A DNA stretch of 64,000 nucleotides from Macrostomum lignano (taxonomy: Eukaryota), in assembly GCA_002269645.1 (NCBI GenBank), contig NIVC01001343.1, positions 62,001 through 126,000 on the forward strand, given 5' to 3'. Every line of letters starts with the position of its first letter. Position 1 is the stretch's first letter. The notes beneath the pieces were generated by a model, which was given only the letters and a program-made list of their open reading frames with translations, was not told the origin of the DNA and searched no databases. Positions 13,062-64,000 of the stretch are shown here, piece by piece. The position numbers were made by a program, and so were the translations under genes.

Positions 13062-28809
<15,748 letters not shown>

Positions 28810-33100: not shown

Positions 33101-36100
33101 GTGTCTACTATCTCTTGTCTACCTCTTCGTGTCTACTATCTCTTGTCTACCTCTTCGTGTCTACTATCTCTTGTCTACTCATTTGTGTCTACTCTCTTGT
33201 CTACATCTTCCTGTATAATATCTCTTGTCTACCTCTTCGTGTCTACTATCTCTTGTCTACATCTTCGTGTCTACTATCTCTTGTCTACTCCTTTGTGTCT
33301 ACTATCTCTTGTCTACCTCTTCGTGTCTACAATCTCTTGTCTACTCCTTCGTGTCTACTATCTCTTGTCTACCTCTTCGTGTCTACTATCTCTTGTCTAC
33401 TCCTTCGTGTCTACTATCTCTTGTCTACCTCTTCGTGTCTACTATCTCTTGTCTACTCATTTGTGTCTACTCTCTTGTCTACATCTTCCTGTTTACTATC
33501 TCTTGTCTACTGCTTCGTGTCTACTATCTCTTGTCTACCTCTTCGTGTCTACTATCTCTTGTCTACCTCTTCGTGTCTACTATCTCTTGTCTACTCATTT
33601 GTGTCTACTCTCTTGTCTACATCTTCCTGTATAATATCTCTTGTCTACCTCTTCGTGTCTACTATCTCTTGTCTACCTCTTCGTGTCTACTATCTCTTGT
33701 CTACTCCTTCGTGTCTACTATCTCTTGTCTACATCTTCGTGTCTACTATCTCTTGTCTACTCCTTCGTGTCTACTATCTCTTGTCTACCTCTTCGTGTCT
33801 ACTATTTCTTATTTACTCATTTGTGTCTACTATCTCTTGTCTACCTCTTCGTGTCTACTATCTCTTGTCTACTGCTTCGTATCTACTATTTCTTGTCTAC
33901 CTCTTCGTGTCTACTATCTCTTGTCTACATCTTCGTGTCTACTATCTCTTGTCTACTGCTTCGTGTCTACTATCTCTTGTCTACATCTTCGTGTCTACTA
34001 TTTCTTCTTTACTCATTTGTGTCTACTATCTCTTGTCTACCTCTTCGTGTCTACTATCTCTTGTCTACTGCTTCGCATCTACTATCTCTTGTCTACCTCT
34101 TCGTGTCTACTATCTCTTGTCTACATCTTCGTGTCTACTATCTCTTGTCTACCTCTTCGTGTCTACTATTTCTTATTTACTCATTTGTGTCTACTATCTC
34201 TTGTCTACCTCTTCGTGTCTACTATCTCTTGTCTACTGCTTCGTATCTACTATCTCTTGTCTACTGCTTCGTGTCTACTATCTCTTGTCTACCTCTTCGT
34301 GTCTACTATTTCTTATTTACTCATTTGTGTCTACTATCTCTTGTCTACCTCTTCGTGTCTACTATCTCTTGTCTACTGCTTCGTATCTACTATCTCTTGT
34401 CTACCTCTTCGTGTCTACTATCTCTTGTCTACATCTTCGTGTCTACTATCTCTTGTCTACTGCTTCGTGTCTACTATCTCTTGTCTACATCTTCGTGTCT
34501 ACTATCTCTTGTCTACCTCTTCGTGTCTACTATCTCTTGTCTACATCTTCGTGTCTACTATCTCTTGTCTACCTCTTCGTGTCTACTATCTCTTGTCTAC
34601 CTCTTCGTGTCTACTATCTCTTGTCTACTGCTTCGTGTCTACTATCTCTTGTCTACCTCTTCGTGTCTACTATCTCTTGTCTACCTCTTCGTGTCTACTA
34701 TCTCTTGTCTACCTCTTCGTGTTTACTATTTCTTCTCTACTCATTTGTGTCTACTATCTCTTGTCTACCTCTTCGTGTCTACTATCTCTTGTCTACTCCT
34801 TTGTGTCTACTATCTCTTGTCTACTCCTTCGTGTCTACTATCTCTTGTCTACCTCTTCGTGTCTACTATCTCTTGTCTACCTCTTCGTGTCTACTATCTC
34901 TTGTCTACCTCTTCGTGTCTACTATCTCTTGTCTACTCCTTCGTGTCTACTATCTCTTGTCTACCTCTTCGTGTCTACTATCTCTTGTCTACTCATTTGT
35001 GTCTACTCTCTTGTCTACATCTTCCTGTTTACTATCTCTTGTCTACTGCTTCGTGTCTACTATCTCTTGTCTACCTCTTCGTGTCTACTATCTCTTGTCT
35101 ACCTCTTCGTGTCTACTATCTCTTGTCTACCTCTTCGTGTCTACTATCTCTTGTCTACTCATTTGTGTCTACTCTCTTGTCTACATCTTCCTGTATAATA
35201 TCTCTTGTCTACCTCTTCGTGTCTACTATCTCTTGTCTACCTCTTCGTGTCTACTATCTCTTGTCTACCTCTTCGTGTCTACTATCTCTTGTCTACATCT
35301 TCGTGTCTACTATCTCTTGTCTACTCCTTTGTGTCTACTATCTCTTGTCTACCTCTTCGTGTCTACAATCTCTTGTCTACTCCTTCGTGTCTACTATCTC
35401 TTGTCTACCTCTTCGTGTCTACTATCTCTTGTCTACTCCTTCGTGTCTACTATCTCTTGTCTACCTCTTCGTGTCTACTATCTCTTGTCTACTCATTTGT
35501 GTCTACTCTCTTGTCTACATCTTCCTGTTTACTATCTCTTGTCTACTGATTCGTGTCTACTATCTCTTGTCTACCTCTTCGTGTCTACTATCTCTTGTCT
35601 ACCTCTTCGTGTCTACTATCTCTTGTCTACTCATTTGTGTCTACTCTCTTGTCTACATCTTCCTGTATAATATCTCTTGTCTACCTCTTCGTGTCTACTA
35701 TCTCTTGTCTACCTCTTCGTGTCTACTATCTCTTGTCTACTCCTTCGTGTCTACTATCTCTTGTCTACATCTTCGTGTCTACTATCTCTTGTCTACTCCT
35801 TCGTGTCTACTATCTCTTGTCTACTCCTTCGTGTCTACTATCTCTTGTCTACCTCTTCGTGTCTACTATCTCTTGTCTACCTCTTCGTGTTTACTATTTC
35901 TTCTCTACTCATTTGTGTCTACTATCTCTTGTCTACCTCTTCGTGTCTACTATCTCTTGTCTACTCCTTTGTGTCTACTATCTCTTGTCTACTCCTTCGT
36001 GTCTACTATCTCTTGTCTACCTCTTCGTGTCTACTATCTCTTGTCTACCTCTTCGTGTCTACTATCTCTTGTCTACCTCTTCGTGTCTACTATCTCTTGT

Positions 36101-38419
36101 CTACTCCTTCGTGTCTACTATCTCTTGTCTACCTCTTCGTGTCTACTATCTCTTGTCTACTCATTTGTGTCTACTCTCTTGTCTACATCTTCCTGTTTAC
36201 TATCTCTTGTCTACTGCTTCGTGTCTACTATCTCTTGTCTACCTCTTCGTGTCTACTATCTCTTGTCTACCTCTTCGTGTCTACTATCTCTTGTCTACCT
36301 CTTCGTGTCTACTATCTCTTGTCTACTCATTTGTGTCTACTCTCTTGTCTACATCTTCCTGTATAATATCTCTTGTCTACCTCTTCGTGTCTACTATCTC
36401 TTGTCTACATCTTCGTGTCTACTATCTCTTGTCTACTCCTTTGTGTCTACTATCTCTTGTCTACCTCTTCGTGTCTACAATCTCTTGTCTACTCCTTCGT
36501 GTCTACTATCTCTTGTCTACCTCTTCGTGTCTACTATCTCTTGTCTACTCCTTCGTGTCTACTATCTCTTGTCTACCTCTTCGTGTCTACTATCTCTTGT
36601 CTACTCATTTGTGTCTACTCTCTTGTCTACATCTTCCTGTTTACTATCTCTTGTCTACTGCTTCGTGTCTACTATCTCTTGTCTACCTCTTCGTGTCTAC
36701 TATCTCTTGTCTACCTCTTCGTGTCTACTATCTCTTGTCTACTCATTTGTGTCTACTCTCTTGTCTACATCTTCCTGTATAATATCTCTTGTCTACCTCT
36801 TCGTGTCTACTATCTCTTGTCTACCTCTTCGTGTCTACTATCTCTTGTCTACTCCTTCGTGTCTACTATCTCTTGTCTACATCTTCGTGTCTACTATCTC
36901 TTGTCTACTCCTTCGTGTCTACTATCTCTTGTCTACTCCTTCGTGTCTACTATCTCTTGTCTACCTCTTCGTGTCTACTATTTCTTATTTACTCATTTGT
37001 GTCTACTATCTCTTGTCTACCTCTTCGTGTCTACTATCTCTTGTCTACTGCTTCGTATCTACTATCTCTTGTCTACCTCTTCGTGTCTACTATCTCTTGT
37101 CTACATCTTCGTGTCTACTATCTCTTGTCTACTGCTTCGTGTCTACTATCTCTTGTCTACTGCTTCGTGTCTACTATCTCTTGTCTACATCTTCGTGTCT
37201 ACTATCTCTTGTCTACATCTTCGTGTCTACTATCTCTTGTCTACCTCTTCGTGTCTACTATCTCTTGTCTACCTCTTCGTGTCTACTATCTCTTGTCTAC
37301 TGCTTCGTGTCTACTATCTCTTGTCTACCTCTTCGTGTCTACTATCTCTTGTCTACCTCTTCGTGTCTACTATCTCTTGTCTACTCCTTCGTGTCTACTA
37401 TCTCTTGTCTACCTCTTCGTGTCTACTATCTCTTGTCTACCTCTTCGTGTCTACTATCTCTTGTCTACTGCTTCGTGTCTACTATCTCTTGTCTACCTCT
37501 TCGTGTCTACTATCTCTTGTCTACCTCTTCGTGTCTACTATCTCTTGTCTACTCCTTCGTGTCTACTATCTCTTGTCTACCTCTTCGTGTCTACTATCTC
37601 TTGTCTACTCCTTCGTGTCTACTATCTCTTGTCTACATCTTCGTGTCTACTATCTCTTGTCTACTCCTTCGTGTCTACTATCTCTTGTCTACTGCTTCGT
37701 GTCTACTATCTCTTGTCTACATCTTCGTGTCTACTATCTCTTGTCTACCTCTTCGTGTCTACTATCTCTTGTTCACCTCTTCGTGTCTACTATCTCTTGT
37801 CTACCTCTTCGTGTCTACTATCTCTTGTCTACTGCTTCGTGTCTACTATCTCTTGTCTACTCCTTCGTGTCTACTATCTCTTGTCTACCTCTTCGTGTCT
37901 ACTATCTCTTGTCTACCTCTTCGTTTCTACTATCTCTTGTCTACTCTTTCGTGTCTACTATCTCTTGTCTAACTCTTCGTGTCTACTATCTCTTGTCTAC
38001 CTCTTCGTGTCTACTATCTCTTGTCTACTGCTTCGTGTCTACTATCTCTTGTCCACCGTCTTTTATCTATCTTATCTTGTCTACCCTTTCATGTCTTCCC
38101 TCTCCCGTCTACTCTCTCCTGTCTACCGTCTCGTCCACTCTACTGTCTACCCTTTTATAGACACTCTTCTCTACTTCTCTTCTCATAATCTCTCCTGACT
38201 ATGCTCATCATTTACCGCCCTGAGCATCACCTGCAGTTTCACAGTCCGACCATTCACGTCGATAACTTTGCTGCCAAACTCCACTCCGATTGTGTGCGAC
38301 GAATCGGCCTTAAATTTTCGCTCAAGAAACTGGTGCAACAGACAGGATTTACCTGTGCCAGCTGAACCAATTATCAAAAATTTAAACAGGTACTCGTAGG
38401 GATCAGTTGAAGAAGCCAT
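30133..38419 (-). CDS. RAB4: Ras-related GTPase Rab4, 225 aa; exons 38419-38231 and 30621-30133
   Basis: [24 protein letters not shown]...[10 protein letters not shown]...KLQ|[29 protein letters not shown], plus GNKRDL, ETSAK and a C-terminal CQC prenylation motif. The P-loop GSAGTGKS is typical of Rab4. Phase-0 intron CAG|GTGATG ... CCCAG|ATC. Confidence 0.95.
30685..38060. repeat. ~7.4-kb 28-bp minisatellite CTACTATCTCTTGTCTACCTCTTCGTGT filling the Rab4 intron
   Basis: About 260 copies. The unit is a diverged 14+14 dimer and gives stop-free ORFs in all three plus-strand frames. Confidence 0.98.
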
Positions 38420-48968: not shown

Positions 48969-51900
48969 TCATTCGGCCTTCGGTCGTTCCCGGCGCAGGA
49001 TGCCCTTAGCGTCGGCTTGAATGAGTTTGGCCAGATCGGCAATCAGATTGCGATTCAGAGCGGCAGAAGCGCACAACAGGCCGCCCATCATGCCGCCAAC
49101 GAAGCCGCAGATGGCCACGTCTTGGCCAGTGAGCAGGAGTCCCGGCGGGCCCATCTCCGGCCGCAGTTGAGCGCACGAATCCGGAGCTAAGCGACTGAGG
49201 CTGTGGTCTAAGCCGTAGATTTCGCCGCGTGGCGAATTGATGTAGTGCTGGTTGGTGAGCGGCGTGCCCACCTGGGAGGGGGGAGGTGAGACAGGAGGGG
49301 CTCAGGTGTTATGCACTTCTATGTGTTCCTGGTGACAAATCCTGGCCTGCTTAATTAATCTGGGGGATCTAGTAGCTTACCCCGGAGGATCAGGTAGCTT
49401 ACCCTGGGGATCTGGTAGTTTAATCTGGGAGGCTGGTAGTTTATTCTGGGAGGCTGGTAGCTTAATCTGGGGATCTGGTAGCTTAATCTGGGGGATCTGG
49501 TAGCTTAATCTTGGGATCTGGTAGCTTAATCTGGGGGATCTAGTAGCTTACCCCGGAGGATCAGGTAGCTTACCCTGGGGATCTGGTAGTTTAATCTGGG
49601 AGGCTAGTAGTTTATTCTGGGAGGCTGGTAGCTTAATCTGGGGATCTGGTAGCTTAATCTGGGGGATCTGGTAGCTTAATCTTGGGATCTGGTAGCTTAA
49701 TCTGGGGGATCTAGTAGCATACCCCGGAGGATCTAGTAGTTTATTCTGGTGATCTGGGGATCTGGTAGTTTAATCTCGGAGGCTGGTAGTTTATTCTGGG
49801 ATGCTGGTAGCTTAATCTGGGGATGTGGTAGCTTAATCTGCGGGATCTGGTAGCTTAATCTGGGGATCTGGTAGCTTAATCTGGGGGTCTGGTAGTTTAA
49901 TCTGGGGGATCTAGTAGCTTACCCCGGAGGATCTGGTAGTTTATTCTGGTGATCTGGGGATCTGGTAGCTTACTCCTGGGGATCTGGTAGTTTAATCTGG
50001 GAGGCTAGTAGTTTAATCTGGGAGGCTAGTAGTTTAATCTGGGAGGCTGGTAGTTTAATCTGGGAGGCTAGTAGTTTAATCTGGGAGGCTGGTAGTTTAA
50101 TCTGGGAGGCTGGTAGTTTAATCTGGGAGGCTAGTAGTTTAATCTGGGAGGCTGGTAGTTTAATCTGGGAGGCTGGTAGTTTATTCTGGGAGGCTGGTAG
50201 CTTAATCTGGAAATCTGGGAGGCTGGTAGCTTAGTCGGGGGATCTGGGAGGCTGGTAGCTTAATCTGGGGATCTGGGAGGGGTGAAAGCTTCATCTGGGA
50301 ATCTGGGAGGGTGAAAGCTTTATCTGGGAATCTGGGAGGGTTGAAGCTTCATCTGGGAATCTGGGAGGGTGGAAGCTCTTTTTATCGGTGATGCGGTAGA
50401 TTAATTGAAAGGATCTGGAAATGTCAAGATCTGTAGTGATGGTGGCCCAGCAACAAGGAAGAATTAACAATGCCCCCTTCCCAAAGCCTCACCTGAAACA
50501 GTTCGACTTCAAGATCGGCCACAGCCGGTACCTGGCACTTGACCAGCTCCCACATCCGCCTGCCGATAGCGTTCTTCAACTCGTTATAATCTCTGCCCCT
50601 GTGACCGCTGCGGCCCTCCTGATACTGGCTGAACCAGTCCCAGTTCGCGAAGGTGACAATCGCACAAGTCAGCCGGTCATCTCCGCGCCTCCTCGGCCAG
50701 CTGGGATCCTTCAGCGAGGGAAACGAAGCGAATAGCAGAGGCGGATCAGCCGCTGCGGCCTCCTGAGGATCAAGGCTAAGATAGGCATTAACAATCGACT
50801 GCAGATCCACAGTCTCAGCCGCTGAGCTGTCAGACGGAGAAAGCAGCCACAGATTGCGACCGCGGATGTCGTCAAATGCCGGATCAGTGGAGGCGCACCT
50901 TCCCGGAGGCAGACGCAGTCCGATGAACACAGACATTGCGCCGTGGCCGGAGCGGAGCTGGCAGTCGGTTAGGGTTCGGGGAATTCGAGACCTGCCAGGT
51001 TTGCCAGGTGTGGTGTACTCATTTAGTGCACGCGTACTTATGAGGCGAACTTGTGTATAATGCTGCTTGCTATGTTGAAACTTCTCTCCACTCTCCCAGA
51101 TTCGGCTACCGCCCTCCCAGATTAAGTTGCCACCCTCCCAGATGAAGCTACCCTCCTCTCAAATTAGGTTGCCACCCTCCCAGATTAAGCTGCCCTCCTC
51201 TCAGATTAAGCTACCACCCTCCCCAGATTAAGCTACCGCCCTCCCAGATTTGGCTACCAGATTAGACTACCGCTCTCTCTCTTAAATTCCTTCAAAGTGT
51301 CTAAAGCATCCTAAACTGTGTCTAAAGTGTCCTAAACTGTGTCTAAAGTGTCCTAAACTGTGTCTAAAGTGTCCTAAACTATGTCTAAAGTGTCCTAAAC
51401 TGTGTCTAAAGCATCCTAAACTGTGTCTAAAGTGTCCTAAACTGTGTCTAAAGTGTCCTAAACTATGTCTAAAGTGTCCTAAACTGTGTCTAAAGCATCC
51501 TAAACTGTGTCTAAAGTGTCCTAAACTGTGTCTGAAGTGTCCTAAACTATGTCTAAAGTGTCCTAAACTATGTCTAAAGTGTCCTAAACTGTGTCTAAAG
51601 CATCCTAAACTGTGTCTAAAGTGTCCTAAACTGCGTCTAAAGTGTCCTAAACTATGTCTAAAGTGTCCTAAACTGTGTCTAAAGTGTCCTAAACTGTGTC
51701 TAAGACTCTAAAGTGTCCAAAACTGTGTCTAAAGTGTCCTAAACTGTGTCTAAAGTGTCCTAAACTGTGTCTAAAGCATCCTAAACTGTGTCTAAAGTGT
51801 CCAAAACTATGTCTAAAGTGTCCTAAACTGTGTCTAAAGTGTCCTAAACTGTGTCTAAAGTGTCCTAAACTGTGTCTAAAGTGTCCTAAACTGTGTCTAA

Positions 51901-54900
51901 AGTGTCATAAACTGTGTCTAAAGTGTCCTAAAATATGTCTAAAGTGTCCTAAACTGTGTCTAAAGTGTCCTAAACTATGTCTGAAGTGTCCTAAACTGTG
52001 TCTAAAGTGTCCTAAACTGTGTCTAAAGTGTCCAAAACTGTGTCTAAAGTGTCCTAAATTATGTCAAAACTATGTCTAAACTATGTCTAAAGTGTCCTAA
52101 ACTGTGTCTAAAGTGTCCAAAACTATGTCTAAAGTGTCCTAAACTGTGTCTAAAGTGTCCTAAACTATGTCTGAAGTGTCCTAAACTGTGTCTAAAGTGT
52201 CCTAAACTGTGTCTAAAGTGTCCAAAACTGTGTCTAAAGTGTCCTAAATTATGTCAAAACTATGTCTAAACTATGTCTAAAGTGTCCTAAACTGTGTCTA
52301 AAGTGTCCAAAACTATGTCTAAAGTGTCCTAAACTGTGTCTAAAGTGTCCTAAACTGTGTCTAAAGTGTCCTAAACTGTGTCTAAAGTGTCTTAAACTAT
52401 GTCTAAAGTGTCCTAAACTGTGTCTAAAGTGTCCTAAACTATGTCTAAAGTGTCCTAAACTATGTCTAAAGTGTCCTTAACTATGTCTAAAGTGTCCTAA
52501 ACTGTGTCTAAAGTGTCCTAAACTGTGTCTAAAGTGTCCTAAACTGTGTCTAAAGTGTCCTAAACTGTTTCTAAAGTGTCTTAAATGCATGTAGTGTCTC
52601 GAATGTGTCTCAACCATACTAAGACCATAAAAAGGCTTACAATAATATAATATTTCCCACAAGACTCACTTCTCCAACGCAGTCTGAGGCAGCAGTTTAG
52701 CAGTATTAATCAGCCCGGCATCAGAGATGATCAGCGGGGCCAGAACAGTGTATTCACCATCTGACCTTTGCACTGTGACGCCAACCGCTCTACCAGTAGT
52801 TTCGTTGCACACAATAGACGACACTGGGGCTCGAACCAAGGCCCTACCGCCAGCTTTTTCAATGACTGGCACGGAGCAGAATGAAATTTCGCTAGGGCCG
52901 CCAATAGGGTAGAAGCCGCCCTGACGAAGGAAGTGATTCAATAGTAGCGCGTGCAGCACTACGGAGGTTTCACCTGGCGGTGTGCCGTAGTCGCCGAAAC
53001 AATAGGCCAATGTACTTTTCAGCGATTCGCTGGAGATGTGCTGGTCTAGGTATTGCTTCAGGCTGATGTGCAGGTAGCTGAGCAGGGGATAGGGGATTGT
53101 GGCCATAGCAGGTCATGTAAAAAGAAGACGAACTTTGTACACAGAAAACATATAGTCATAGAGAAGAGTCATAGGGATAGAAAGGCTCATACAGAGACTA
53201 TAGTCATAGAGTCATATCAGGTCATAGAGATAGAAAGGCTCATACAGAGACTAAAGTCACAAAGAGTCATATCAGGTCATAGGGATAGAATGGCTCATAC
53301 AGAGACTAAAGTCACAAAGAGTCATATCAGGTCATAGGGATAGAATGGCTCATACAGAGACTAAAGTCATACAGGTTATTGACAGGTCTGACAGGTTATT
53401 GGGAGAGAAAGGCTCATAAAGAGGCTATAGTCTCAAAGAGTAATATCAGGTCATAGGGATAGAATGGCTCATACAGAGGCTATAGTAATGGCTCGAAGCG
53501 CAAGTTATGACTTATGACAACAGCAATGCGGTCATACATAAAGAAACGCTCATACACTAAAAAAGGTCATATAATAGAGCTCATGCAGTACGTATCTCAG
53601 TACAAGCCAGGTAAACTACTAAAAGTAGCCTAATACTCACCGAAAATAGGCTGAAAACAAGCCGCATAAGCCAGACTTGATCAGCAGCCTAGCCAAAGGC
53701 AATGGCAACAATTTCAATCCCCAATAGAGCTTTGAGCCGCGTTTCAATCGATCTAGCAGACTGAAAAACGCCTCGATACCAGCTGCATCGTCTGGCCACT
53801 CCTGAGCCAGACGCTTGGCGAACTCTTTCCGATCGCCAGTCACCAGTACGCTGCGATTCTTGCCGCCGCCATCGACGCAGCCAACAATCACTCTGTCAAA
53901 GTCGACATCCAAAGGCTGCCACATCAGTTTACCATCGGTTAGCTGATCAGCTAGGCAGCGTACAAACGACCCGGGTCGCATCTCGCCAATATAATGTATA
54001 CCAACATCGAATTCGTAGCCTTTATCAACGAAAGTGTGACAACAGCCGCCAATAACGTCGTGCTGTTCCAATACTAGCACTCGTTTGCGAGCCCTAGCCA
54101 ATAGGGTGGCCGCGGTTAGACCGCCAATGCCGGAGCCAATCACAATGGCGTCTAGGCGCTCGGGTATGCGAGACCCCGTGAAGTTTTGGCGTAGGACAGA
54201 ATCGCGAGCGGACTGCACAGTTTGGAGGGGGATGGGGGTTCAATTGCTAAAAATAGATTAGATGTACACCCAATGCTATATGAGATAAAGCATATCAACG
54301 TTATCAGTCAGCCATAAAACGCCAGCGCAACACCTCGCCCAAGTCCTCTACCCCACTCTGCTATCAGTCAGCCATAAACCCCAGGCCCAGCGTAACACCC
54401 CGCCCAAGTCCTCTACCCCACTCTGCTATCAGTCAGCCATAAACCCCAGGCCCAGCGCAACACCTCGCCCAAGTCCTCTATCCCACTCTGCTATCAGTCA
54501 GCCATAAACCCCAGGCCCAGCGTAACACCCCGCACAAGTCCTCTACCCCACTCTGCTATCAGTCAGCCATAAACCCCAGGCCCAGCGTAACACCCCGCCC
54601 AAGTCCTCTATCCCACTCTGCTATCAGTCAGCCATAAACCCCAGGCCCAGCGTAACACCCCGCCCAAGTCCTCTACCCCACTCTGCTATCAGTCAGCCAT
54701 AAACCCCAGGCCCAGCGTAACACCCCGCCCAAGTCCTCTACCCCACTCTGCTATCAGTCAGCTACAAATAAGTTGAGACTTAATACAATTAAGTTTAAGG
54801 CATCTTCACAGTAATAGACGAACCTGATTGTTGATAACATCATCCGCGGTTCTCTCTGGTTTTTTAACCAGTAAACTAGGCAGTACAAACGGATTCCTAC

Positions 54901-55009: not shown

Positions 55010-55834
55010 TTTGCTTTAATCTGTAAATGAAATAAACAAAATATGTTGATAGTGTTGTTATTTCACTGAGCTTTCTAGATGATAGTAAATATTGGTGCTG
55101 ACTAGTTATAAATATAGACTAAAGCTACTACTAAATATAAAATCACAAGTAGTCTAATAGAAAAAACTGGAAAAACAAAGTCTTAAGGACACTTGTGTTG
55201 CAAAAACATCGAATTAAGGACGGATTAAGGTTTTTAGATTATTTAGCTCGTATTTATTAATCTGACAAAAAAGGAATCAATAATAAAAATCATTTTAAAA
55301 TAACACATTTCAATTCAATTAGGAATAATCAATATAGTCGCAATAATAGCTGAATTGCAAATGTTGAAATAACACAGACAGATACAAAAATCACACATCT
55401 TGAAATCAAAATAACTTTGAAAAGTAAGGCATAAACAATAACAACACACGGATTATTTAATCAGGTGCAGTTACAAGATAATTGCTTGCGAAATAAGAAT
55501 ACTTATTAGCACAGCTATCAGAAAATTGTTGGAAAAACATCTAGCTAGTATTATGGAAATTTTTCTCTCATCTTTTCCTCTATCTATAAATAGACCAAAA
55601 AAGCAGACTCTGGGAAAATATACATGGCTGTCTAGATAACACAAATATGTAAAAACTATAAACTAATAACTATTCGAAAAACAGGCAAGGTCGGGTAAAT
55701 AGGGAAGCTACAGGTTGTATAAAAATAGTTCTAAAAAAACTGCCTTATTAAAGCAACGACAGAGGAAGACAAGGATAAACATTTATAACCCTTCACCATT
55801 TCTAGTAGGCGTGCACATGCCCAGCTTCCTCAAA

Positions 55835-56492: not shown

Positions 56493-56768
56493 TCACTTCT
56501 TCTTTTTCTTTCCTTTTTTGCCTTTCTTGCCTTTCTTCTTTGAAGTGCTCGGTCTGCTAGCAAAGCCGCGCAATTCCAAAGCATCAACGACTCCGTGAGC
56601 AATCATGTAGATGTTCTCCATTGCTGCTGGGGACATAATGTCCACTACAGGCTTCTCAGCTTTAGCGGCCGCAGCCGATTTGCCACGCTTTTTGCCAGAC
56701 TTTTTGCCAGATTTTTTGCCAGACTTTTTGCCGCCAAGGCGGCCGCCAGCGGATTTGGCTTTGCGCGG
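56493..56768 (-). CDS. SMKR1: Small lysine-rich protein 1-like (91 codons + stop; no start codon in this exon)
   Basis: Hand translation: [91 protein letters not shown]. The core VDI.SPAAM.N.Y.IAH.V.D.L.LRGF is the SMKR1 motif as I recall it. Preceded by the acceptor ...CCCACCCCACAG|. Missed by the ORF track because it has no upstream start codon. Confidence 0.85.
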
Positions 56769-56837
56769 CTGTGGGGTGGGCGTTGAAAATGGGATAAGGA
56801 AATCGATATGCTGGTTTAAAGGTGATCGCTAATCTAC

Positions 56838-58525
56838 AGATGCTTAATCTCCACTAATCCATTGAAGCCTAATCTCCACTAATCCACTGATGCTTAATCT
56901 CCACAAATCCACTGATGCTTAATCTCCACTAATCCACTGAAGTCTAATCTCCACTAATCCACTGAAGCCTAATCTCCACTAATCCACTGATGCTTAATCT
57001 CCACTAATCCACAGATGCTTAATCTCCACTAATCCACTGAAGCCTAATCTCCACTAATCCACAGATGCTTAATCTCCACTAATCCACTGAAGCCTAATCT
57101 CCACTAATCCACTGAAGCCTAATCTCCACTAATCCACAGATGCTTAATCTCCACTAATCCACTGAAGCCTAATCTCCACTAATCCACTGAAGCCTAATCT
57201 CCACTAATCCACTGAAGCCTAATCTCCACTAATCCACAGATGCTTAATCTCCACTAATCCACTGAAGCCTAATCTCCACTAATCCACAGATGCTTAATCT
57301 CCACTAATCAACTAATACTTAATCAGCACCAATTCACTGATGCTTAATCTGCACTAATCCACAGATGCTTAATCTGCACTAATCCACTGGTGCTTAATCT
57401 CCACTAATCAGCTGATGCTTAATTAGCACCAATTCACTGATGCTTAATCTACACTTATCCACAGATGCTTAATCTCCACTAATCAACTGATGCTTAATTA
57501 GCACCAATTCACTGATGCTTAATCTGCACTTATCCACAGATGCTTAATCTGCACCAATCCACAGATGCTTAATCTGCACTAATCCACTGGTGCTTAATCT
57601 GCACTAATCAACTGATGCTTAATTAGCACCAATTCACTGATGCTTAATCTCAACCAATCCACAGATGCTTAATCTCCACTAATCCACTGATGCTTAATCT
57701 GCACTAATCCACAGATGCTTAATCTGCACTAATCCACAGATGCTTAATCTGCACCAATCCACAGATGCTTAATCTCCACTAATCAACTGATGCTTAATCT
57801 GCACTAATCCACAGATGCTTAATCTGCACTAATCCACAGATGCTTAATCTGCACCAATCCACAGATGCTTAATCTGCACTAATCCACTGGTGCTTAATCT
57901 GCACTAATCAACTGATGCTTAATTAGCACCAATTCACTGATGCTTAATCTGCACTAATCCACAGATGCTTAATCTGCACTAATCCACTGGTGCTTAATCT
58001 CCACTAATCAGCTGATGCTTAATTAGCACCAATTCACTGATGCTTAATCTACACTTATCCACAGATGCTTAATCTCCACTAATCAACTGATGCTTAATTA
58101 GCACCAATTCACTGATGCTTAATCTGCACTTATCCACAGATGCTTAATCTGCACCAATCCACAGATGCTTAATCTGCACTAATCCACTGGTGCTTAATCT
58201 GCACTAATCAACTGATGCTTAATTAGCACCAATTCACTGATGCTTAATCTGCACTAATCCACAGATGCTTAATCTGCACTAATCCACTGGTGCTTAATCT
58301 CCACTAATCAGCTGATGCATAATCTACACTAATTCATGGATTCTTATTCTGCACTAACTCATGGATGCTTAATCTCAACTAATCCACTGAAGCCTAATCT
58401 CCACCAATCCACAGATGCTTAATCTGCACTTATCCACAGATGCTTAATCTCCACTAATCAACTGATGCTTAATTAGCACCAATTCACTGATGCTTAATCT
58501 GCACCAAACCACAGATGCTTAATCT
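56838..58525. repeat. 25-bp minisatellite TGATGCTTAATCTCCACTAATCCAC
   Basis: About 67 copies immediately upstream of the SMKR1-like acceptor; the left and right halves use different variant sets. Confidence 0.96.
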
Positions 58526-59308
58526 AGAGTATATAAATCCATCAATGCTAAATTTACAATACTCTAGATGTTCAAGATCCTAGCAATATACAAGAACTTT
58601 GGTATTTTATATCAGGTTTAATGTATTCTAATACAAACTTTAGAAAAAAAGTGGCATAAAAATTTGGCAAAATTTTATTTTTTCAATGCTTTATTCACTG
58701 GTACAACCTTAATTGCTACCATATTCTTAGTCTACAATTTAATTGAACAATATCTCTAACAATATTGCTCACTTTTACAAATATAACCAATGAGCAACAA
58801 TAGATTCAAAGCTATTAATCTTTTTTGACATTAAAAAACAATATTTTGATCCTAATATTGAATAAAGAAATATTTTTTTCAAATAATTATAGATGAAAAA
58901 TGGGTTATAAACTAAGTAATAGAAATTGGAACCCTAAATAATAATATAGGCCTATTCTAGGCCATTATATATATAAAGTATCCACATATAATAGGAATTC
59001 AGTAAACATAGTAGAAACATATAGTTTTATAATAAATTCAATACTATAAAAGCCACAACTGGGGTAAAATCAGGGTTCAACAATAAAAAATTACTATAAT
59101 ATATACTATAATGTATTTTAGAACTAGAAAAAAGGTTAAAAACAGGGTATAACAACTTAGATTAAGTCATTTTAATAAATTTTGTTGAATTAAAAATTAA
59201 ATACAAAAGAGTATTTCGATGTCTTGCAAATGTAATAGGCCTTAATTTTTACTATGAAGTTTCTTAGAAAATTGTATTTTTAAATACTATTGTTATATTA
59301 TGCAAATA

Positions 59309-60048
59309 TAGTGATGGATGAAAATTATTTTTCAAATCGAAATCGAAATCAAAATTTTTGGGTCCTTAGAATCAAAATTGAAATTGAAATTGAAATCAAA
59401 ATCAAAATTTTTGAGCTTAACAAATTTTTACTTTTTCGCTAATCATGCAAAAAGGTTAACACCTTGTCTCTGCATGTATGAGCTTACATGTTTTATAAAA
59501 AGTATCTTTGATATGTTTAAACCAGAATACTTACGATTTAACTTACTTTAAAAATATGAAATAGAAAATGCTGGTATATTATGTATTATACACTTGTACA
59601 TAGAAATATAGTAGAAGTTGTATTATACTTCACCAGTGTTTAAGCTGAAGATCTAGATATGAGTAGCCTATATCCATTTGATTAAGGCTTTAGGTCTTTA
59701 GCCAATTAAAATCCATGCCGATGAGTTTAGCCAGTGGGCTTGTAGAGGTTGAGGTGGGTGCAGCACAAGGCCTGGAACAGTGTGTGCCCCACACAATCTT
59801 CTTGTAGAAAAGGCGATTTTCACCTCCCCACTGAGTCTTAGAACCACACTTCCTTTCACTTCCTATAGATTTTCTTTCTCGTATAGCATGATCATCAATG
59901 TCTAAATTGTTAAAATGTAACCAAAATTTCAAAATGATTTTTGATGAATGGTGTTGAAATTCGAAATTGAAATCTAAATTATTTTGATGCAAAATTAGTT
60001 TTGAAATTTGGAATATCAAAATCAAAATCGAATTTTGATCCATCACTA
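59309..60048. mobile_element. Non-autonomous hAT-type element (740 bp)
   Basis: TIR TAGTGATGGAT(G/C)AAAATT at both ends, subterminal AAATCG/AAATCA repeats and a perfect 8-bp TSD TGCAAATA (59301-59308 and 60049-60056). Confidence 0.85.
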
Positions 60049-62591
60049 TGCAAATATAAAAATATTTCTTATATTTAATATATTCTGTACATTATGCATA
60101 CCATTGTTTATTTTAAATAGTAGGAAAAATTATACTATAAGAGGCCAATTAAAGTTCAAGAATAATAAACTCATTTCCTTTCCTTGTTTTATTCAGCTTT
60201 TTAAAGCTTTTCACTTTGTGTCCTCCAGTCACTCTATTTAAAATCAAAAGTCAATCAGCCTCAAAGCTTGTATTTGCTCTTGTACTACTTATTTTGAGTA
60301 GTAGATAGTGCCTTAAAAGTAGCTCCAAGACTAGGAGAATTTAATCCATTTTAAGAGAATGAGAACTATAGATTTAGAATCTAGAAAATTGCCTTGAAAG
60401 GCTGACTACCTACTAGAGGGTAGAATGGTCCAGATAAGTCCAGTCTAAGAAACCCACCTCAATGCAGAATATCCTATAAATAAGCCGTGATCCTCTGATC
60501 CTGAGAACGCCCAGGACTAAGAAAAATCCCTTTAGAAGAGTAGACTAAAGACTAGAGGTAAGGGATATATTGCCATTAGACCACTTAGGCTAAAAGTACA
60601 TATGCTATCAGTAAAAGTACATTCATGCACTACTAGTAAAATATATATATGAAATCAATAAAGGTATACAAAAGACTAATAAAAGGAGAAAGCTGAGAAA
60701 CCCTTATTAGAACATTGGTTGCAGCAGTAAGATATTTATAGTAAGAACCATAACACTTGTAACAACTTAGTAACAGCTGTGGAATTATTTTAGAAGGTAG
60801 AAATAACCCATTTATCACAAATTCATTAAAATAATTTTAAAAGTAAAAGTTTAAAAGTTTAATTTTAATTATACTTTAATTATACATTTATATAGATAAC
60901 TACATATTAATATCTAAAAATAAGATTAAAAAGATTCAGGCACAGATCTAGAAAATTTTGAAGAGGGCATAAGTTACTAAATAGCTCTGCTTTGATTATT
61001 TAATCTTATAAATATAAGATACATTTACTTTAAAAAAACAGACCTATGATTAGGAAAATATAGGGTATTGTTTCCCATATAAGAAGATGAAAAAATCAAA
61101 CTCAAGTGGGTACATATTTGCTGCACCCTTTCTAAAGTCTACAAGTCTAAAGTCTAAAATCTACTGATAGATTTTAATAGTAAAATAATATATTTTAGCA
61201 GCTAAAACAAAAGAAAAAGATGTTTTCATTATATTAGAATTTGTTAGCATTAGAATTGAATTAGAACATATTAATGTTTATCAAAAACATTATATTAGTA
61301 ACATTTATTAGATTTTTCAAAAAATTTGCAAGTGATTTGCAAGAAAAAAATCATTTGCAAACAAAAAAACACAAATAATCTGGGATCTAGTGATAGTCAA
61401 ATTGGCAAAAGATGATCTGGCAATAGATTTTAATTGTAGATTTTATTGATTTCAGATCCAAAAAAACTTAACATGAATATAGTTGTTATTTAATTTTATA
61501 TATACTGGTAGCATTATAAAGAATTCTATTTAAGATAGCCAGTATCTTCTTTAATAACATTTCTGTATACTATATAGTCAGGATCATGGCATATTTACAC
61601 TAGAACAAATCCTATAAAAAGTTTGATTATGCTATGTGCCAAAACTATTCCTATCAAAAAACTTTGCTTGTGCCATGTATTATAAATTTTTGAAAATGCA
61701 AAAATCAGTAATTTTCCATTTGAAAAATACAGTTAAAACTTATATTTGAATCTATTTCATAGAAAATACAATGTTAACATAAATTAATTTAAAAAGCTAT
61801 CAACAAAGTGCTAATAAAAAGAAATTACTTGCTAAGTTTCTATCAGAGAAAATATTGTCTTATTGGAAGTTTTTGTCTTCCACCATACTGCGCCAGAATT
61901 TTTATCTTGCCTGCTATTATGCTAGTGCAGCGCATGTCTAACCCCCTTTTGCATTGCACTAGAATTTTCTATAAAAGGCCATCTCCCTAATTATAGTTGC
62001 ACTTTTGACATAATTTTAGGTGTCACAGCAAACATTTTAATAATAATAATATTAATTTAATAATAATAATGTTTTAGATAGGCCTAAGAAAACTAGAAAG
62101 TGGCTTTTATTAGCTATGATCTATATGAGAGTAATTGAAATCTAGCCTCTGGGACTAGGCCTAATGTCTAATGCCATTGGGATTATGGATCTAATTTTTT
62201 CTATTAGGAGGCCTATAATACCTAGATATTGCTTATAATATTTAAATATATTATAAGACTACACTGAGACTTTCACAGTTCTAAAAGCAGTGTCATTGTC
62301 ATAAGTCTAAAAAGAAATCATCAAAACAAGGAAAAAACAGGCCTAGATGGTAAAATTCGTCAGCTGAAGGGCTACGCCCATTTGGCATTGCTATCCCTCT
62401 CTTTTGGATGGGCATTGGCACAGGTTACACTAAATTTATCAACATCTATAAAATTTTGTTATTTCATTAAGCTTTCTAGATGATAGTAAATGTTGGTGCT
62501 GACTAGTTAAAATATAGACTAAAGCTACTATTAAATATAAGATCACAAGTAATCTAATAGAAAAAACTGGAAAAACAAAGTAGCTAAGCAA

Positions 62592-62815
62592 TATCTAGCC
62601 AGACAATATCTAGCCAGACAATGTCCAGCCAGACAATGTCTAGCCAGATGATATCTAGCCAGACAGAATCTAGCCAGACGATGTCCAGCTAGATGAACAA
62701 AGCTGGATGTCCAGATGATGTCCAGCCAGACGGTGAACCAGATTATTTCTAGCCAGACGATGTCCAGCTAGACGGTGAACCAGATTATCTCCAGCTAGAG
62801 GATATCTAGCCAGAT
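62592..62815. repeat. ~20-bp degenerate repeat ATCTAGCCAGAC.ATG
   Basis: About 10 imperfect copies. Confidence 0.75.
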
Positions 62816-62939
62816 GGTGTTCAGCATGAGATAGAACTTGAAGTGATTGAAGTGTAGGTTTAATATTATGAATTTAAGGGTTTTTTAAAGGCTATTGAAT
62901 ATTTAAATGCTATTGCAGCATTTGGCTATTTAATGCAGC

Positions 62940-63325
62940 AGATGCAGGACCTATGGGTGTGCAAGGTATATGAATATGCAAAAGCCACTTGGCTGGACCA
63001 CTCAATTTGGTGTTGATGACATTCACAAGCGGAGCACGTGAAGAAACAATGAGGTTGAAGGCTGGCACTGTCATTTGAAGACCCGCGCCTACGGCCTACA
63101 GAGGCCAGTTACAGCTGTACGTGCTATTTGAACTGCTCCACAAAGAGGCTCTGTTGGCAGACGTACAGGCCCAGCTTGTTCTGCAGGGCAAAAATGGCCA
63201 AGGAGTGAAGCGTGCTAAATATCATCAAATTATAGGCGATTGATTGAAATCACTGTACCACAGGTATGACGATTAGGAGCTGACACCTGTGGAGCTTCTC
63301 TGAAGGTGCAGCATGCTGCATTGAA
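62940..63325 (+). pseudogene. Decayed MULE-type transposase C-terminal fragment
   Basis: Across stops and frameshifts it reads YEYAKATWLDHSIW...RNNEVEGWHCHLK...LYVLFELLHKEALLADVQAQLV...KYHQI...LTPVELL*RCSML, matching the RTNN.VEGWH motif of MULE-like transposases. Confidence 0.55.
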
Positions 63326-64000
63326 TTTTAGTTTTTTACTTCTTTACTCTTATTGTTTCTAAAATATAATCTTGTTTCTAAGAACTCTTTTTGTTTTGTT
63401 TTAACTGCAATTTTAACTTTATATTTTTGCATAAACAATGAATACACAAATAACCATGGGTTTGTATAACCATGCATTCGCCTTCGTTTTACTTTCGAAA
63501 TTGGCTTTCATATTTTTTAATTTCATTTCTTCTGTATATTTTTGAGACTGCGTCTGCATGGATATTGGACAGGCCTACTCAGATAACCGAATTCGTCAAC
63601 AGTGCCTAGGTAGCCGAATTCGTCAACAGAGTTGACGAATTAAATTTTGACGAATTCGGTGGCACCCACTGGCACTACAATACATTGATAAGGCTAAGAT
63701 AAAAATATAGCATATATATAGGCCTAGGCCCTAGCCTACGGCTACAGGTCTCCTCTGCATTTTCGATTAGCTGACACACTTAATAGCCCTAATAAAATAT
63801 AAATAAAAAAACCAGCGACCAGCTCATTGCTAACAATTTCAAGCTGACATCGAATTGGCTACTACCACTTGGCAATGGCAATAGATATCATGGACTGGTC
63901 ATCGCGCCTAATTTTTCTTAACTATTGCCAGTTAAAAAAAATGAATATTTCCTAGAAGAGTGACTTATTAAGAATAAAAACATAAAAAATATTGGTATAT

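What the first reader, a model, noticed from the sequence alone, without database searches (positions are those of the whole stretch)
56493..56831. SMKR1-like ORF has no start codon and begins exactly at a splice acceptor: possible spliced-leader-supplied AUG
Seen: on the minus strand a conserved SMKR1-type frame starts at CCG (Pro) right after ...CCCACCCCACAG| at 56769. An in-frame TAG lies 21 codons upstream (56831-56829) with no ATG in between, and the first internal Met is residue 45. Established: SMKR1 proteins begin Met-Pro-x-Lys (from memory), and flatworm spliced leaders end in AUG, which can act as the initiator Met. Inference: trans-splicing here would give an in-frame M-PRKAKS, so the protein's first codon would come from the SL RNA. 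The competing explanation is a cis-spliced ATG-only exon; the best candidate is AACAATG|GTATGC at 60104-60102, about 3.3 kb upstream.
Basis: partly seen in the sequence, partly recalled or inferred. Interest (0 to 1): 0.8.

Follow-up and report, generated by a model that had tools for sequence, protein, structure and literature searches.

The report
Flatworm SMKR1 gene with split start codon
This is the main coding exon of the Macrostomum lignano version of a small lysine-rich gene (SMKR1); its start codon lies on a separate upstream piece of RNA in many animals, so the missing ATG is inherited, and sequence alone cannot say whether this flatworm supplies it from a normal upstream exon or from its spliced leader.

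Summary
A 91-codon SMKR1-type frame (56768-56496, minus strand; stop 56495-56493) starts at CCG directly after ...ccccacag|. An in-frame TAG lies 21 codons upstream, with no ATG between, and the first internal Met is residue 45.

Two results change how it should be read.
1. The window is Macrostomum lignano, assembly Mlig_3_7, contig NIVC01001343.1 (20,459 bp, 100% identical). This flatworm trans-splices about 30-39% of its genes to a 35-nt spliced leader (SL) that ends in ATG.
2. The missing ATG is ancestral to the gene family. In annotated SMKR1 genes of an oyster, a snake and an annelid, exon 1 ends in ATG|GT and exon 2 starts at the homologous acceptor. More than a dozen other species show the same junction.

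So the AUG is almost certainly delivered by splicing onto this acceptor. Which donor delivers it is unresolved:
- a cis exon, about 0.55. The only plausible candidate is ATG|GTATGC at 60104-60102.
- the SL, about 0.35, possibly alongside a cis exon.

No RNA evidence could be reached. SL-supplied start codons are already documented in flatworms, so this is at most a new instance of a known mechanism.

The parts
56493..56768 (-). Exon 2 of the M. lignano SMKR1 orthologue. It holds the whole CDS except the initiator codon: 91 codons (56768-56496) plus the stop TGA (56495-56493).
   Evidence: Translation. Homology to SMKR1 proteins (best E = 3e-15). Alignment. Contains an in-frame 12-bp repeat encoding (KSGK)n at 56679-56732.
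56769..56812 (-). 3' splice acceptor: AG at 56770-56769, last six bases CCACAG, with a pyrimidine-rich tract upstream. It is homologous to the intron-1 acceptor of SMKR1 genes in other animals.
   Evidence: Sequence. Homologous acceptors followed by CCN/GGA/GCT in L003, L004, L005, L002, L008 and L009. It does not match the [T/C]TNCAG motif reported at 44% of M. lignano SL acceptor sites (PMC8629364).
56829..56831 (-). In-frame TAG that closes the frame 21 codons upstream of the acceptor. There is no ATG between it and the acceptor.
56829..58525 (-). 25-bp minisatellite, about 68 copies, filling most of the sequence just upstream of the acceptor. It lies in the intron or in the outron (the stretch removed when an SL is added), depending on the model.
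   Evidence: Tandem Repeats Finder. Sequence. No GTRAG donor occurs inside it.
59310..60047 (-). 738-bp MITE (non-autonomous DNA transposon). It has 17-bp terminal inverted repeats (16/17 match) and a 10-bp target-site duplication ATATTTGCAT. It is inserted 54 nt downstream of the candidate ATG|GT donor junction.
60096..60104 (-). Best candidate for the end of a cis exon 1: ATG (60104-60102) followed by the donor GTATGC (60101-60096). Unproven.
   Evidence: It is the only one of six ATG|GT sites in the 7.2 kb upstream with A at +3 and G at +5. It is not of the GT[G/A]AG type seen at about 65% of M. lignano donors. The hypothetical intron is 3332 nt, or 887 nt once the MITE and minisatellite are removed.

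Best explanation
This is the M. lignano orthologue of SMKR1, a two-exon gene with a split start. In this family the initiator ATG is the last three bases of exon 1. A phase-0 intron follows it, and exon 2 carries all the remaining codons. The frame at 56768-56496 is exon 2 and the AG at 56770-56769 is the conserved intron-1 acceptor. The lack of an ATG is therefore inherited gene architecture, not an anomaly. The most likely source of the AUG is still a short cis exon (5' UTR plus ATG) spliced to this acceptor. The only plausible candidate in the window is ATG|GTATGC at 60104-60102. It would be separated from exon 2 by an intron of originally about 0.9 kb, later enlarged by a MITE and a 1.7-kb minisatellite. 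Shown: the homology, the acceptor position, the conserved exon structure in other animals, and the species. Inferred: that exon 1 survives in this species, and where it lies. Flatworms often use one acceptor for both cis- and trans-splicing, so SL-spliced copies encoding the same protein may coexist.
For: (1) In annotated orthologues, exon 1 ends ATG|GT and exon 2 holds the rest of the CDS: Saccostrea cucullata (...GATATG|GTATTT ... TTTTATAG|CCTGGA), Candoia aspera (...ACTATG|GTAATG ... CTCACAG|GGAGGC) and Dimorphilus gyrociliatus (...AATATG|GTTTGT ... TCAATAG|CCAAAG). (2) At least 14 ORF-caller proteins from unannotated genomic contigs read straight through the acceptor as '...Q|P...'. Annotated or mRNA-derived versions of the same or closely related proteins start 'MP...': P0177 versus P0007/P0178, and P0033 versus P0025/28/34/37-40. 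(3) Two assembled contigs that read as spliced transcripts carry ordinary 96-nt and 155-nt 5' UTRs running into ATG|CC. (4) Further genomic loci have an ATG|GT 130-530 nt upstream of the homologous acceptor, including a perfect caccATG|gtaagt in the closest homologue's locus. (5) The window candidate ATG|GTATGC scores at least as well on a generic donor matrix as the three verified donors: 1.11 versus -0.11, 0.22 and -0.09. Its repeat-adjusted intron of 887 nt is close to the M. lignano mean of 1.1-1.4 kb (PMC5730564). (6) A non-GTRAG donor is used in the neighbouring RetSat gene (CAG|GTTCGT). (7) The acceptor CCACAG lacks the YTNCAG motif typical of M. lignano SL acceptors.
Against: None of the six ATG|GT sites in 7.2 kb has the GT[G/A]AG donor found at about 65% of M. 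lignano introns. None of the four GTRAG donors upstream has an in-frame ATG. One moderately good ATG|GT among about 10 expected by chance is weak evidence. No promoter or transcript evidence supports an exon at 60.1 kb. The species has an SL ending in ATG that makes a cis exon dispensable, and roughly 45% of its human-conserved genes are trans-spliced (my calculation from the figures in PMC8629364). Four co-oriented conserved neighbours carry SL-type acceptor motifs just upstream of their ATGs.
Confidence: 0.55

Rival explanations
1. SL-supplied start codon. The pre-mRNA starts somewhere upstream of the acceptor without a usable 5' splice site. The 35-nt M. lignano SL (CGGTCTCTTACTGCGAAGACTCAATTTATTGCATG) is trans-spliced to the AG at 56769, and its terminal AUG becomes codon 1, giving M-PRKAKS... 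In evolutionary terms, the SL would have taken over the role of the ancestral ATG-only exon 1. This may be the only route or may coexist with cis-splicing.
For: The window is M. lignano (100% identity over 20,459 bp to GCA_002269645.1 NIVC01001343.1; RetSat best hit). The SL ends in ATG and is added to 30-39% of genes, with enrichment among genes conserved with human (PMC8629364; PMC5730564). PMC10468722 notes that the final ATG is a likely start codon. In S. mansoni more than 40 cDNAs need the SL AUG (Cheng et al. 2006, as cited in PMC9851317). The SL AUG is in frame here by construction, and the exon has no other AUG before residue 45. There is no consensus ATG|GTRAG donor in 7.2 kb upstream, and no GTRAG at all in the 2 kb next to the acceptor. 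Four co-oriented neighbours (RetSat, a calcineurin-B-like gene, POLE4, Rab4) each have YTNCAG within 3-42 nt of their ATG; chance is about 0.002. The repeat-adjusted SMKR1-RetSat spacing is about 0.8-0.9 kb, under the 1-kb operon criterion of PMC8629364.
Against: There is no SL-junction read or transcript; every route to RNA data failed. The start-less exon is fully explained by the ancestral structure, so it adds no support. The acceptor CCACAG lacks the T at -5 of the SL-acceptor motif. A plausible cis donor exists at 60102. Even if the gene is trans-spliced, the SL could join upstream of a retained exon 1.
Confidence: 0.35
2. The exon is not translated from its 5' end. Either translation starts at the internal Met45, giving a 47-aa protein, or this copy is a decaying paralogue that has lost its first exon.
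For: Two near-invariant family residues are replaced: Y56 to M, and the Trp of the RGFxW motif is absent (RGFASRP). M. lignano carries many duplicated genes (PMC5730564). No protein with this sequence is on record.
Against: The frame is open for all 44 codons upstream of Met45 and encodes the Lys/Ser/Gly-rich N-terminal region found in every homologue. It begins exactly at the conserved acceptor with the conserved Pro. The core and the C-terminal tail are intact, with no frameshift or premature stop.
Confidence: 0.07

Closest known systems
SMKR1 (small lysine-rich protein 1) genes of other animals, e.g. Saccostrea cucullata, Candoia aspera, Dimorphilus gyrociliatus, Lamellibrachia satsuma, Protopterus annectens
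   Same: Small Lys-rich protein with an N-terminal K/S/G-rich stretch, the core D-[IL]-[LM]-x-P-x-A-M-x-N-x-Y-Y-I-[AS]-H...L-x-x-R-G-F, and a KKKGKKGKK tail. The gene is split right after the ATG by a phase-0 intron, and exon 2 usually starts with Pro.
   Different: Exon 1 is not identified here. Two near-invariant residues are changed (YY to YM; the Trp after RGF is missing). The upstream intron or outron is swollen by a 1.7-kb minisatellite and a MITE. The host organism has an AUG-terminated SL that could replace exon 1.
SL-AUG-initiated mRNAs of flatworms (Cheng, Cohen, Ndegwa and Davis 2006, J Biol Chem 281:733; 'slORFs' in PMC9851317)
   Same: The organism is a flatworm whose SL ends in AUG. 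The recipient exon is open from the acceptor, in frame with the SL AUG, and has no AUG of its own near the 5' end.
   Different: Those cases rest on cDNAs carrying the SL. Here there is no RNA evidence, and a cis alternative is predicted by the gene's ancestry.
Acceptor sites shared between cis- and SL trans-splicing in flatworms (PMC12582326)
   Same: A first-intron acceptor next to the start of the CDS is the kind of site reported to be used by both pathways (on average 66% of SL acceptor sites also show cis-splicing). Here both pathways would encode the same protein.
   Different: That survey covered parasitic flatworms, not Macrostomum. Dual use at this site is only a possibility.

Membership tests
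SMKR1 (small lysine-rich protein 1) family | Significant sequence similarity to named SMKR1 proteins | tested here: met
   40 hits, best E = 3e-15. Named 'small lysine-rich protein 1' in Saccostrea (5e-14), Protopterus (4.7e-9) and Candoia (1.2e-7). No Pfam model exists or matches.
SMKR1 (small lysine-rich protein 1) family | Conserved core (D-I/L-L/M-x-P-x-A-M-x-N-x-Y-Y-I-A/S-H ... R-G-F-x-W) flanked by Lys-rich N- and C-terminal regions | tested here: inconclusive
   the invariant A50, Y55, H59, R68, G69 and F70 and the Lys-rich tail are present. Near-invariant Y56 is Met, and the near-invariant Trp after RGF is absent.
SMKR1 (small lysine-rich protein 1) family | Gene structure: ATG is the last codon of exon 1, a phase-0 intron follows, and the rest of the CDS is in exon 2 | tested here: inconclusive
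   The exon-2 side is met: the acceptor is at the homologous position. Exon 1 is not identified; the only candidate is at 60104-60102.
Flatworm mRNAs that use the SL 3'-terminal AUG as initiator | The organism has an SL RNA whose leader ends in AUG | tested here: met
   The window is M. lignano Mlig_3_7. The SL sequence ends ...TTGCATG (PMC8629364).
Flatworm mRNAs that use the SL 3'-terminal AUG as initiator | The SL AUG is in frame with the ORF, and there is no in-frame AUG in the recipient exon upstream of the conserved coding region | tested here: met
   the ORF begins at the first base after the AG, the upstream frame is closed by TAG with no ATG, and the first Met is residue 45.
Flatworm mRNAs that use the SL 3'-terminal AUG as initiator | SL-containing transcripts joined at this acceptor | not testable with these tools
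   No M. lignano reads or transcripts for this gene could be reached. Exact look-ups were negative, metagenome scans were empty, and supplements do not mention SMKR1.
Flatworm mRNAs that use the SL 3'-terminal AUG as initiator | No cis exon supplies the AUG | tested here: inconclusive
   There is no ATG|GTRAG in 7.2 kb, but one plausible ATG|GTATGC. Sequence beyond window position 64000 was not seen.

The most novel reading that the evidence does not exclude
In Macrostomum lignano the ancestral ATG-only coding exon of SMKR1 has been lost, and the spliced leader's terminal AUG now serves as the start codon at the old intron-1 acceptor. That would be a clean case of an SL replacing a coding exon. 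The gene's ancient 'ATG|intron' layout would have made the switch possible without changing a single residue. It would also explain why the gene seems to be missing from M. lignano protein annotations.
Probability: 0.35. Interest if true: 0.55.

Novelty: new member of a known kind. Interest (0 to 1): 0.35.

Why it matters
1. Annotation. No protein with this sequence is on record for M. lignano. The likely reasons, which are inference, are that the coding exon has no ATG and the product is shorter than 100 aa. Gene finders that ignore the SL's ATG, or ATG-only exons, will miss genes like this in flatworms.

2. Evolution. SMKR1 has a start codon separated from the rest of the CDS by an intron in molluscs, annelids and vertebrates. 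In a lineage whose SL ends in AUG, such a gene can move between cis- and trans-supplied start codons with no change in the protein. That makes it a convenient test case for how SL trans-splicing takes over first-intron acceptors, and for whether the conserved SL AUG is maintained by genes that depend on it.

3. Limits. SL-AUG initiation has been documented in flatworms since 2006, so even the positive outcome would add an example, not a principle.

Tried and rejected
- **Rfam scan of the window**: 0 hits, so no SL RNA gene is present.
- **Search for the M. lignano SL 3' end in the window**: only chance-level matches with 3 mismatches.
- **Early species identification misled me.** The word-indexed protein search found nothing for a 569-aa ORF and only about 50%-identical hits for a RetSat exon, none from Macrostomum. 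I provisionally ruled out Macrostomum. The exhaustive HMMER search and an exact protein look-up overturned that. The word index is lossy.
- **An acoel origin** was considered after PMC9911081. It was dropped because that SL does not end in AUG, and the species was then settled.
- **Exact look-ups of six forms of the SMKR1 protein** (MPRKAKS..., PRKAKS..., MSPAAM... and three others) in the contig and protein collections: none is on record.
- **Two scans of JGI metagenome contigs** for exon sequence: none found.
- **Supplements of three M. lignano papers** searched for SMKR1: nothing. A fourth paper has no held supplements.
- **The repeat finder on 54.8-64 kb** was swamped by the minisatellite. 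I replaced it with a self-BLAST.
- **GC-AG donors after ATG**: no convincing site.
- **GTRAG donors with an upstream in-frame ATG**: none.
- **An upstream operon partner on the minus strand within 7 kb**: none. The only coding-like stretch (62.9-63.3 kb) is a frameshifted MULE-type transposase remnant on the plus strand.
- **Caveat on the donor scores.** The donor scoring matrix uses generic metazoan frequencies that I set from memory. It is a rough guide only.

Full report
**1. The observation**

On the minus strand, the frame from 56768 to 56496 encodes [91 protein letters not shown], with the stop at 56495-56493. It begins at CCG immediately after cccaccccacag, whose AG is at 56770-56769. 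The same frame is closed by TAG at 56831-56829, 21 codons upstream, and holds no ATG in between. The first internal Met is residue 45.

The frame is a genuine homologue of 'small lysine-rich protein 1' (SMKR1). There were 40 hits, the best at E = 3e-15, with named proteins from Saccostrea, Protopterus and Candoia. Pfam has no model for it. An alignment shows the family's Lys-rich N-terminus, its core (...D-I-L-S-P-x-A-M-x-N-L-Y-Y-I-A-H...R-G-F-x-W) and its KKKGKKGKK tail. The window's protein keeps the invariant residues, but it has Met for the near-invariant second Tyr and lacks the Trp after RGF.

**2. Which organism**

The first searches were unhelpful. A 569-aa ORF had no hits. A RetSat exon gave only about 50%-identical hits, none from a flatworm.

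I then spliced the neighbouring retinol-saturase-like (RetSat) gene by hand and ran it against 1.84 billion representatives.
- The best hit by a wide margin (519 bits, against 388 for the next) is a Macrostomum lignano protein, UniRef A0A1I8J5P6.
- A second M. lignano entry, A0A1I8FN95, matches the window at 82-92% identity even in out-of-frame stretches. It is therefore a frameshifted model of this same gene from the older ML2 assembly.

Finally, the 152-aa POLE4-like ORF (39882-39424) is recorded exactly in NCBI GCA_002269645.1, the Mlig_3_7 assembly of M. lignano, on contig NIVC01001343.1. The 20,459 bp fetched around it are 100.000% identical to window 49882-29424, with no gaps. The window is therefore that contig, and window coordinate = record coordinate - 62,000.

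M. lignano performs SL trans-splicing.
- Its 35-nt leader is CGGTCTCTTACTGCGAAGACTCAATTTATTGCATG, which ends in ATG (PMC8629364).
- It is found on 30-39% of genes (PMC8629364; PMC5730564) and is enriched on genes conserved with human.
- From the figures in PMC8629364 I calculate that about 45% of human-conserved genes are trans-spliced.
- The flatworm SL AUG is a documented initiator. More than 40 S. mansoni cDNAs need it (Cheng et al. 2006, as cited in PMC9851317, and PMC12582326).

**3. The missing ATG is the family's normal architecture**

I mapped three annotated SMKR1 proteins onto their genomic loci.

| Species | End of exon 1 | Intron | Start of exon 2 |
|---|---|---|---|
| Oyster, Saccostrea cucullata | ...GATATG\|GTATTT | 924 nt | TTTTATAG\|CCTGGAAAG |
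| Snake, Candoia aspera | ...ACTATG\|GTAATG | 618 nt | CTCACAG\|GGAGGC |
| Annelid, Dimorphilus gyrociliatus | ...AATATG\|GTTTGT | 49 nt | TCAATAG\|CCAAAG |

In all three, the last codon of exon 1 is ATG, the intron is phase 0, and exon 2 holds the rest of the CDS.

The same junction shows up indirectly in many other species.
- ORF-caller products from unannotated genomic contigs read through the acceptor as '...FQ|PGAPKKK', '...SQ|PAGHKSGK', '...PPQ|PGKAKKSAG' and so on. Annotated or transcript-derived versions of the same or closely related proteins start 'M|PGAPKKK' (Lamellibrachia) or 'M|PAGHKSGK'.
- Two assembled contigs that read as spliced transcripts have ordinary 96-nt and 155-nt 5' UTRs running into ATG|CC.
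- Three more genomic loci show acceptor|CCN or GCT, with an ATG|GT 130-530 nt upstream. One is caccATG|gtaagt, 530 nt upstream in the locus of the closest homologue.

So 'no start codon, begins at an acceptor' is what an SMKR1 exon 2 looks like in animals that have no SL at all. The observation by itself says nothing for or against SL use.

**4. Cis exon or spliced leader in M. lignano?**

Only sequence-based evidence was available.

*Donors.* In the 7,232 nt upstream that the window holds, there are six ATG|GT sites; base composition predicts about 10.
- None has the GT[G/A]AG donor found at about 65% of M. lignano donor sites (PMC8629364).
- The four GTRAG sites present have no in-frame ATG.
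- There are no convincing ATG|GC sites.
- The only site with a reasonable donor (A at +3, G at +5) is ATG|GTATGC at 60104-60102.
- On a rough generic matrix it scores 1.11. The three verified orthologue donors score -0.11, 0.22 and -0.09.
- The adjacent RetSat gene uses a non-GTRAG donor, CAG|GTTCGT.

*Intron size.* The implied intron is 3,332 nt. It contains a 738-bp MITE with a 10-bp target-site duplication (60047-59310) and the 1,697-bp minisatellite (56829-58525). Without these it is 887 nt, close to the species mean of 1.1-1.4 kb (PMC5730564).

*Acceptor.* It reads CCACAG. The motif enriched at M. lignano SL acceptors is [T/C]TNCAG, found at 44% of sites, and this acceptor lacks the T at -5.

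*Neighbours.* The next four genes downstream on the same strand are RetSat, a calcineurin-B-like EF-hand gene, POLE4 and Rab4. Each has a YTNCAG 3-42 nt upstream of its ATG.
- The background rate is 0.0046 per nt, so the chance of 4 out of 4 within 50 nt is about 0.002.
- Two non-conserved genes in the window have none.
- This fits a cluster of trans-spliced conserved genes with SMKR1 at its upstream end.
- The repeat-adjusted SMKR1-RetSat spacing is about 0.8-0.9 kb, just inside the 1-kb operon criterion of PMC8629364.

*Upstream genes.* No upstream gene lies on the minus strand within the window. The only coding-like stretch is a decayed MULE transposase on the other strand.

*Weighing.*
- I estimate the donor evidence mildly favours the SL, by a likelihood ratio of roughly 1.6-2.
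- I estimate the acceptor motif mildly favours cis, at about 0.7.
- The two nearly cancel, so the estimate rests on priors: about 45-60% that this conserved gene is trans-spliced, times about 0.6 that the SL joins at this acceptor and not upstream of a retained exon 1.
- My estimates are about 0.55 that a cis ATG-terminated exon is the main source of the AUG, about 0.35 that the SL supplies it at least in part, and about 0.07 for an internal start or a decaying copy.

These numbers are judgement, not measurement. In parasitic flatworms, on average 66% of SL acceptor sites also show cis-splicing (PMC12582326), so both routes may operate here. Both would give the same protein.

**5. Attempts to get RNA evidence**

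All failed.
- Exact look-ups of several forms of the protein, in the contig collection and the 15-billion-protein collection, were negative.
- JGI metagenome scans for exon sequence were empty.
- The supplements of three M. lignano papers do not mention SMKR1.

The gene therefore appears to be unannotated as a protein in M. lignano. That would be expected for a 92-aa product whose genomic ORF has no ATG; this is inference.

**6. Comparison with what is known, and verdict**

The gene is a new, apparently unannotated member of the SMKR1 family, with the family's usual split start. The proposed mechanism, an SL AUG acting as initiator, has been an established flatworm phenomenon since 2006. A positive result would add an instance. 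Its one point of interest would be evolutionary: an ancestral ATG-only exon replaced by the SL with no change in the protein.

Its two alternative readings are exactly the two that remain, and the decisive test is a simple count of junction reads in existing M. lignano RNA-seq. Interest is moderate to low, at 0.35.

Noticed in passing
window 1-64000 (29424-49882 verified): The window is Macrostomum lignano assembly Mlig_3_7 (GCA_002269645.1), contig NIVC01001343.1, with window coordinate = record coordinate - 62,000. 20,459 bp are 100% identical. Genes annotated in that stretch are RetSat (655 aa), an EF-hand protein (169 aa), a POLE4-like protein (152 aa) and Rab4 (225 aa), all on the window's minus strand.
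   Followed up: yes
55026-55021, 46765-46760, 39891-39886, 38464-38459 (minus strand): Four co-oriented conserved genes (RetSat, a calcineurin-B-like gene, POLE4, Rab4) each have the M. lignano SL-acceptor motif [T/C]TNCAG 3-42 nt upstream of their ATG; chance is about 0.002. They are probably SL trans-spliced, possibly as polycistronic units. The POLE4-Rab4 spacer is about 1 kb and mostly tandem repeat. Two non-conserved genes (starts at 9674 on the minus strand and 10727 on the plus strand) lack the motif.
   Followed up: partly
39891-39880 (minus strand): If the SL joins at CTGCAG|TCC ATG TCG upstream of POLE4, the SL's own AUG is in frame two codons upstream of the annotated start (AUG UCC AUG...). 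That would give a possible two-residue N-terminal extension. At RetSat, 11 nt lie between the acceptor and the ATG, so the SL AUG is out of frame and would open a short overlapping uORF.
   Followed up: no
59310-60047: A 738-bp MITE with 17-bp terminal inverted repeats (AGTGATGGAT[C/G]AAAATT) and a perfect 10-bp target-site duplication ATATTTGCAT. The duplication length fits a Mutator-like element, and the perfect duplication suggests a recent insertion.
   Followed up: yes
about 62850-63350, plus strand: A frameshifted remnant of a MULE/Mutator-type transposase (motif NNEVEGWHCHLK, followed by ...LQLYVLFELLHKEALLADVQAQLVLQ). I recognised it by eye from six-frame translation and did not confirm it with a profile search.
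   Followed up: partly
62456-62581 and 55055-55181: A 127-bp dispersed repeat, 94.5% identical and in the same orientation. One copy lies 46 nt upstream of the RetSat start codon; the other lies 5.7 kb upstream of the SMKR1 exon, next to a 15-bp tandem array. It could be a transposon fragment or a duplicated promoter-proximal segment.
   Followed up: partly
20000-28700; 30640-38200; many smaller arrays: Very long simple repeats: about 8.7 kb of (TCTA)n and a 7.5-kb minisatellite inside the Rab4 intron. Many 21-65-bp minisatellites also sit in introns and spacers, for example 65 bp x 6.8 in RetSat intron 1 and 21 bp x about 60 in a later RetSat intron. This fits the report that 15% of the M. 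lignano genome is simple or tandem repeat.
   Followed up: partly
window 49005-54227 (RetSat gene): UniProt A0A1I8FN95, named 'Sema domain-containing protein' (M. lignano, ML2 assembly), is a frameshift-ridden model of this RetSat gene. Its odd stretches equal alternate-frame translations of the window. A0A1I8J5P6 is a 48%-identical paralogue.
   Followed up: yes
58526-64000: A block with 31% G+C and a CpG observed/expected ratio of 0.36, against 0.55-0.75 elsewhere in the window. AGGCCT occurs 9 times in this 5.5 kb, out of 13 in the whole window. Unexplained.
   Followed up: no
L002 5466-6000 (ENA ERZ26052287, unknown animal): The closest SMKR1 homologue, P0001, was called from an internal ATG. 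The locus shows caccATG|gtaagt 530 nt upstream of aactag|CCA ATG AAG, so the true protein probably starts M-P-M-K-K-K. That would extend the conserved split-start structure to this species too.
   Followed up: partly
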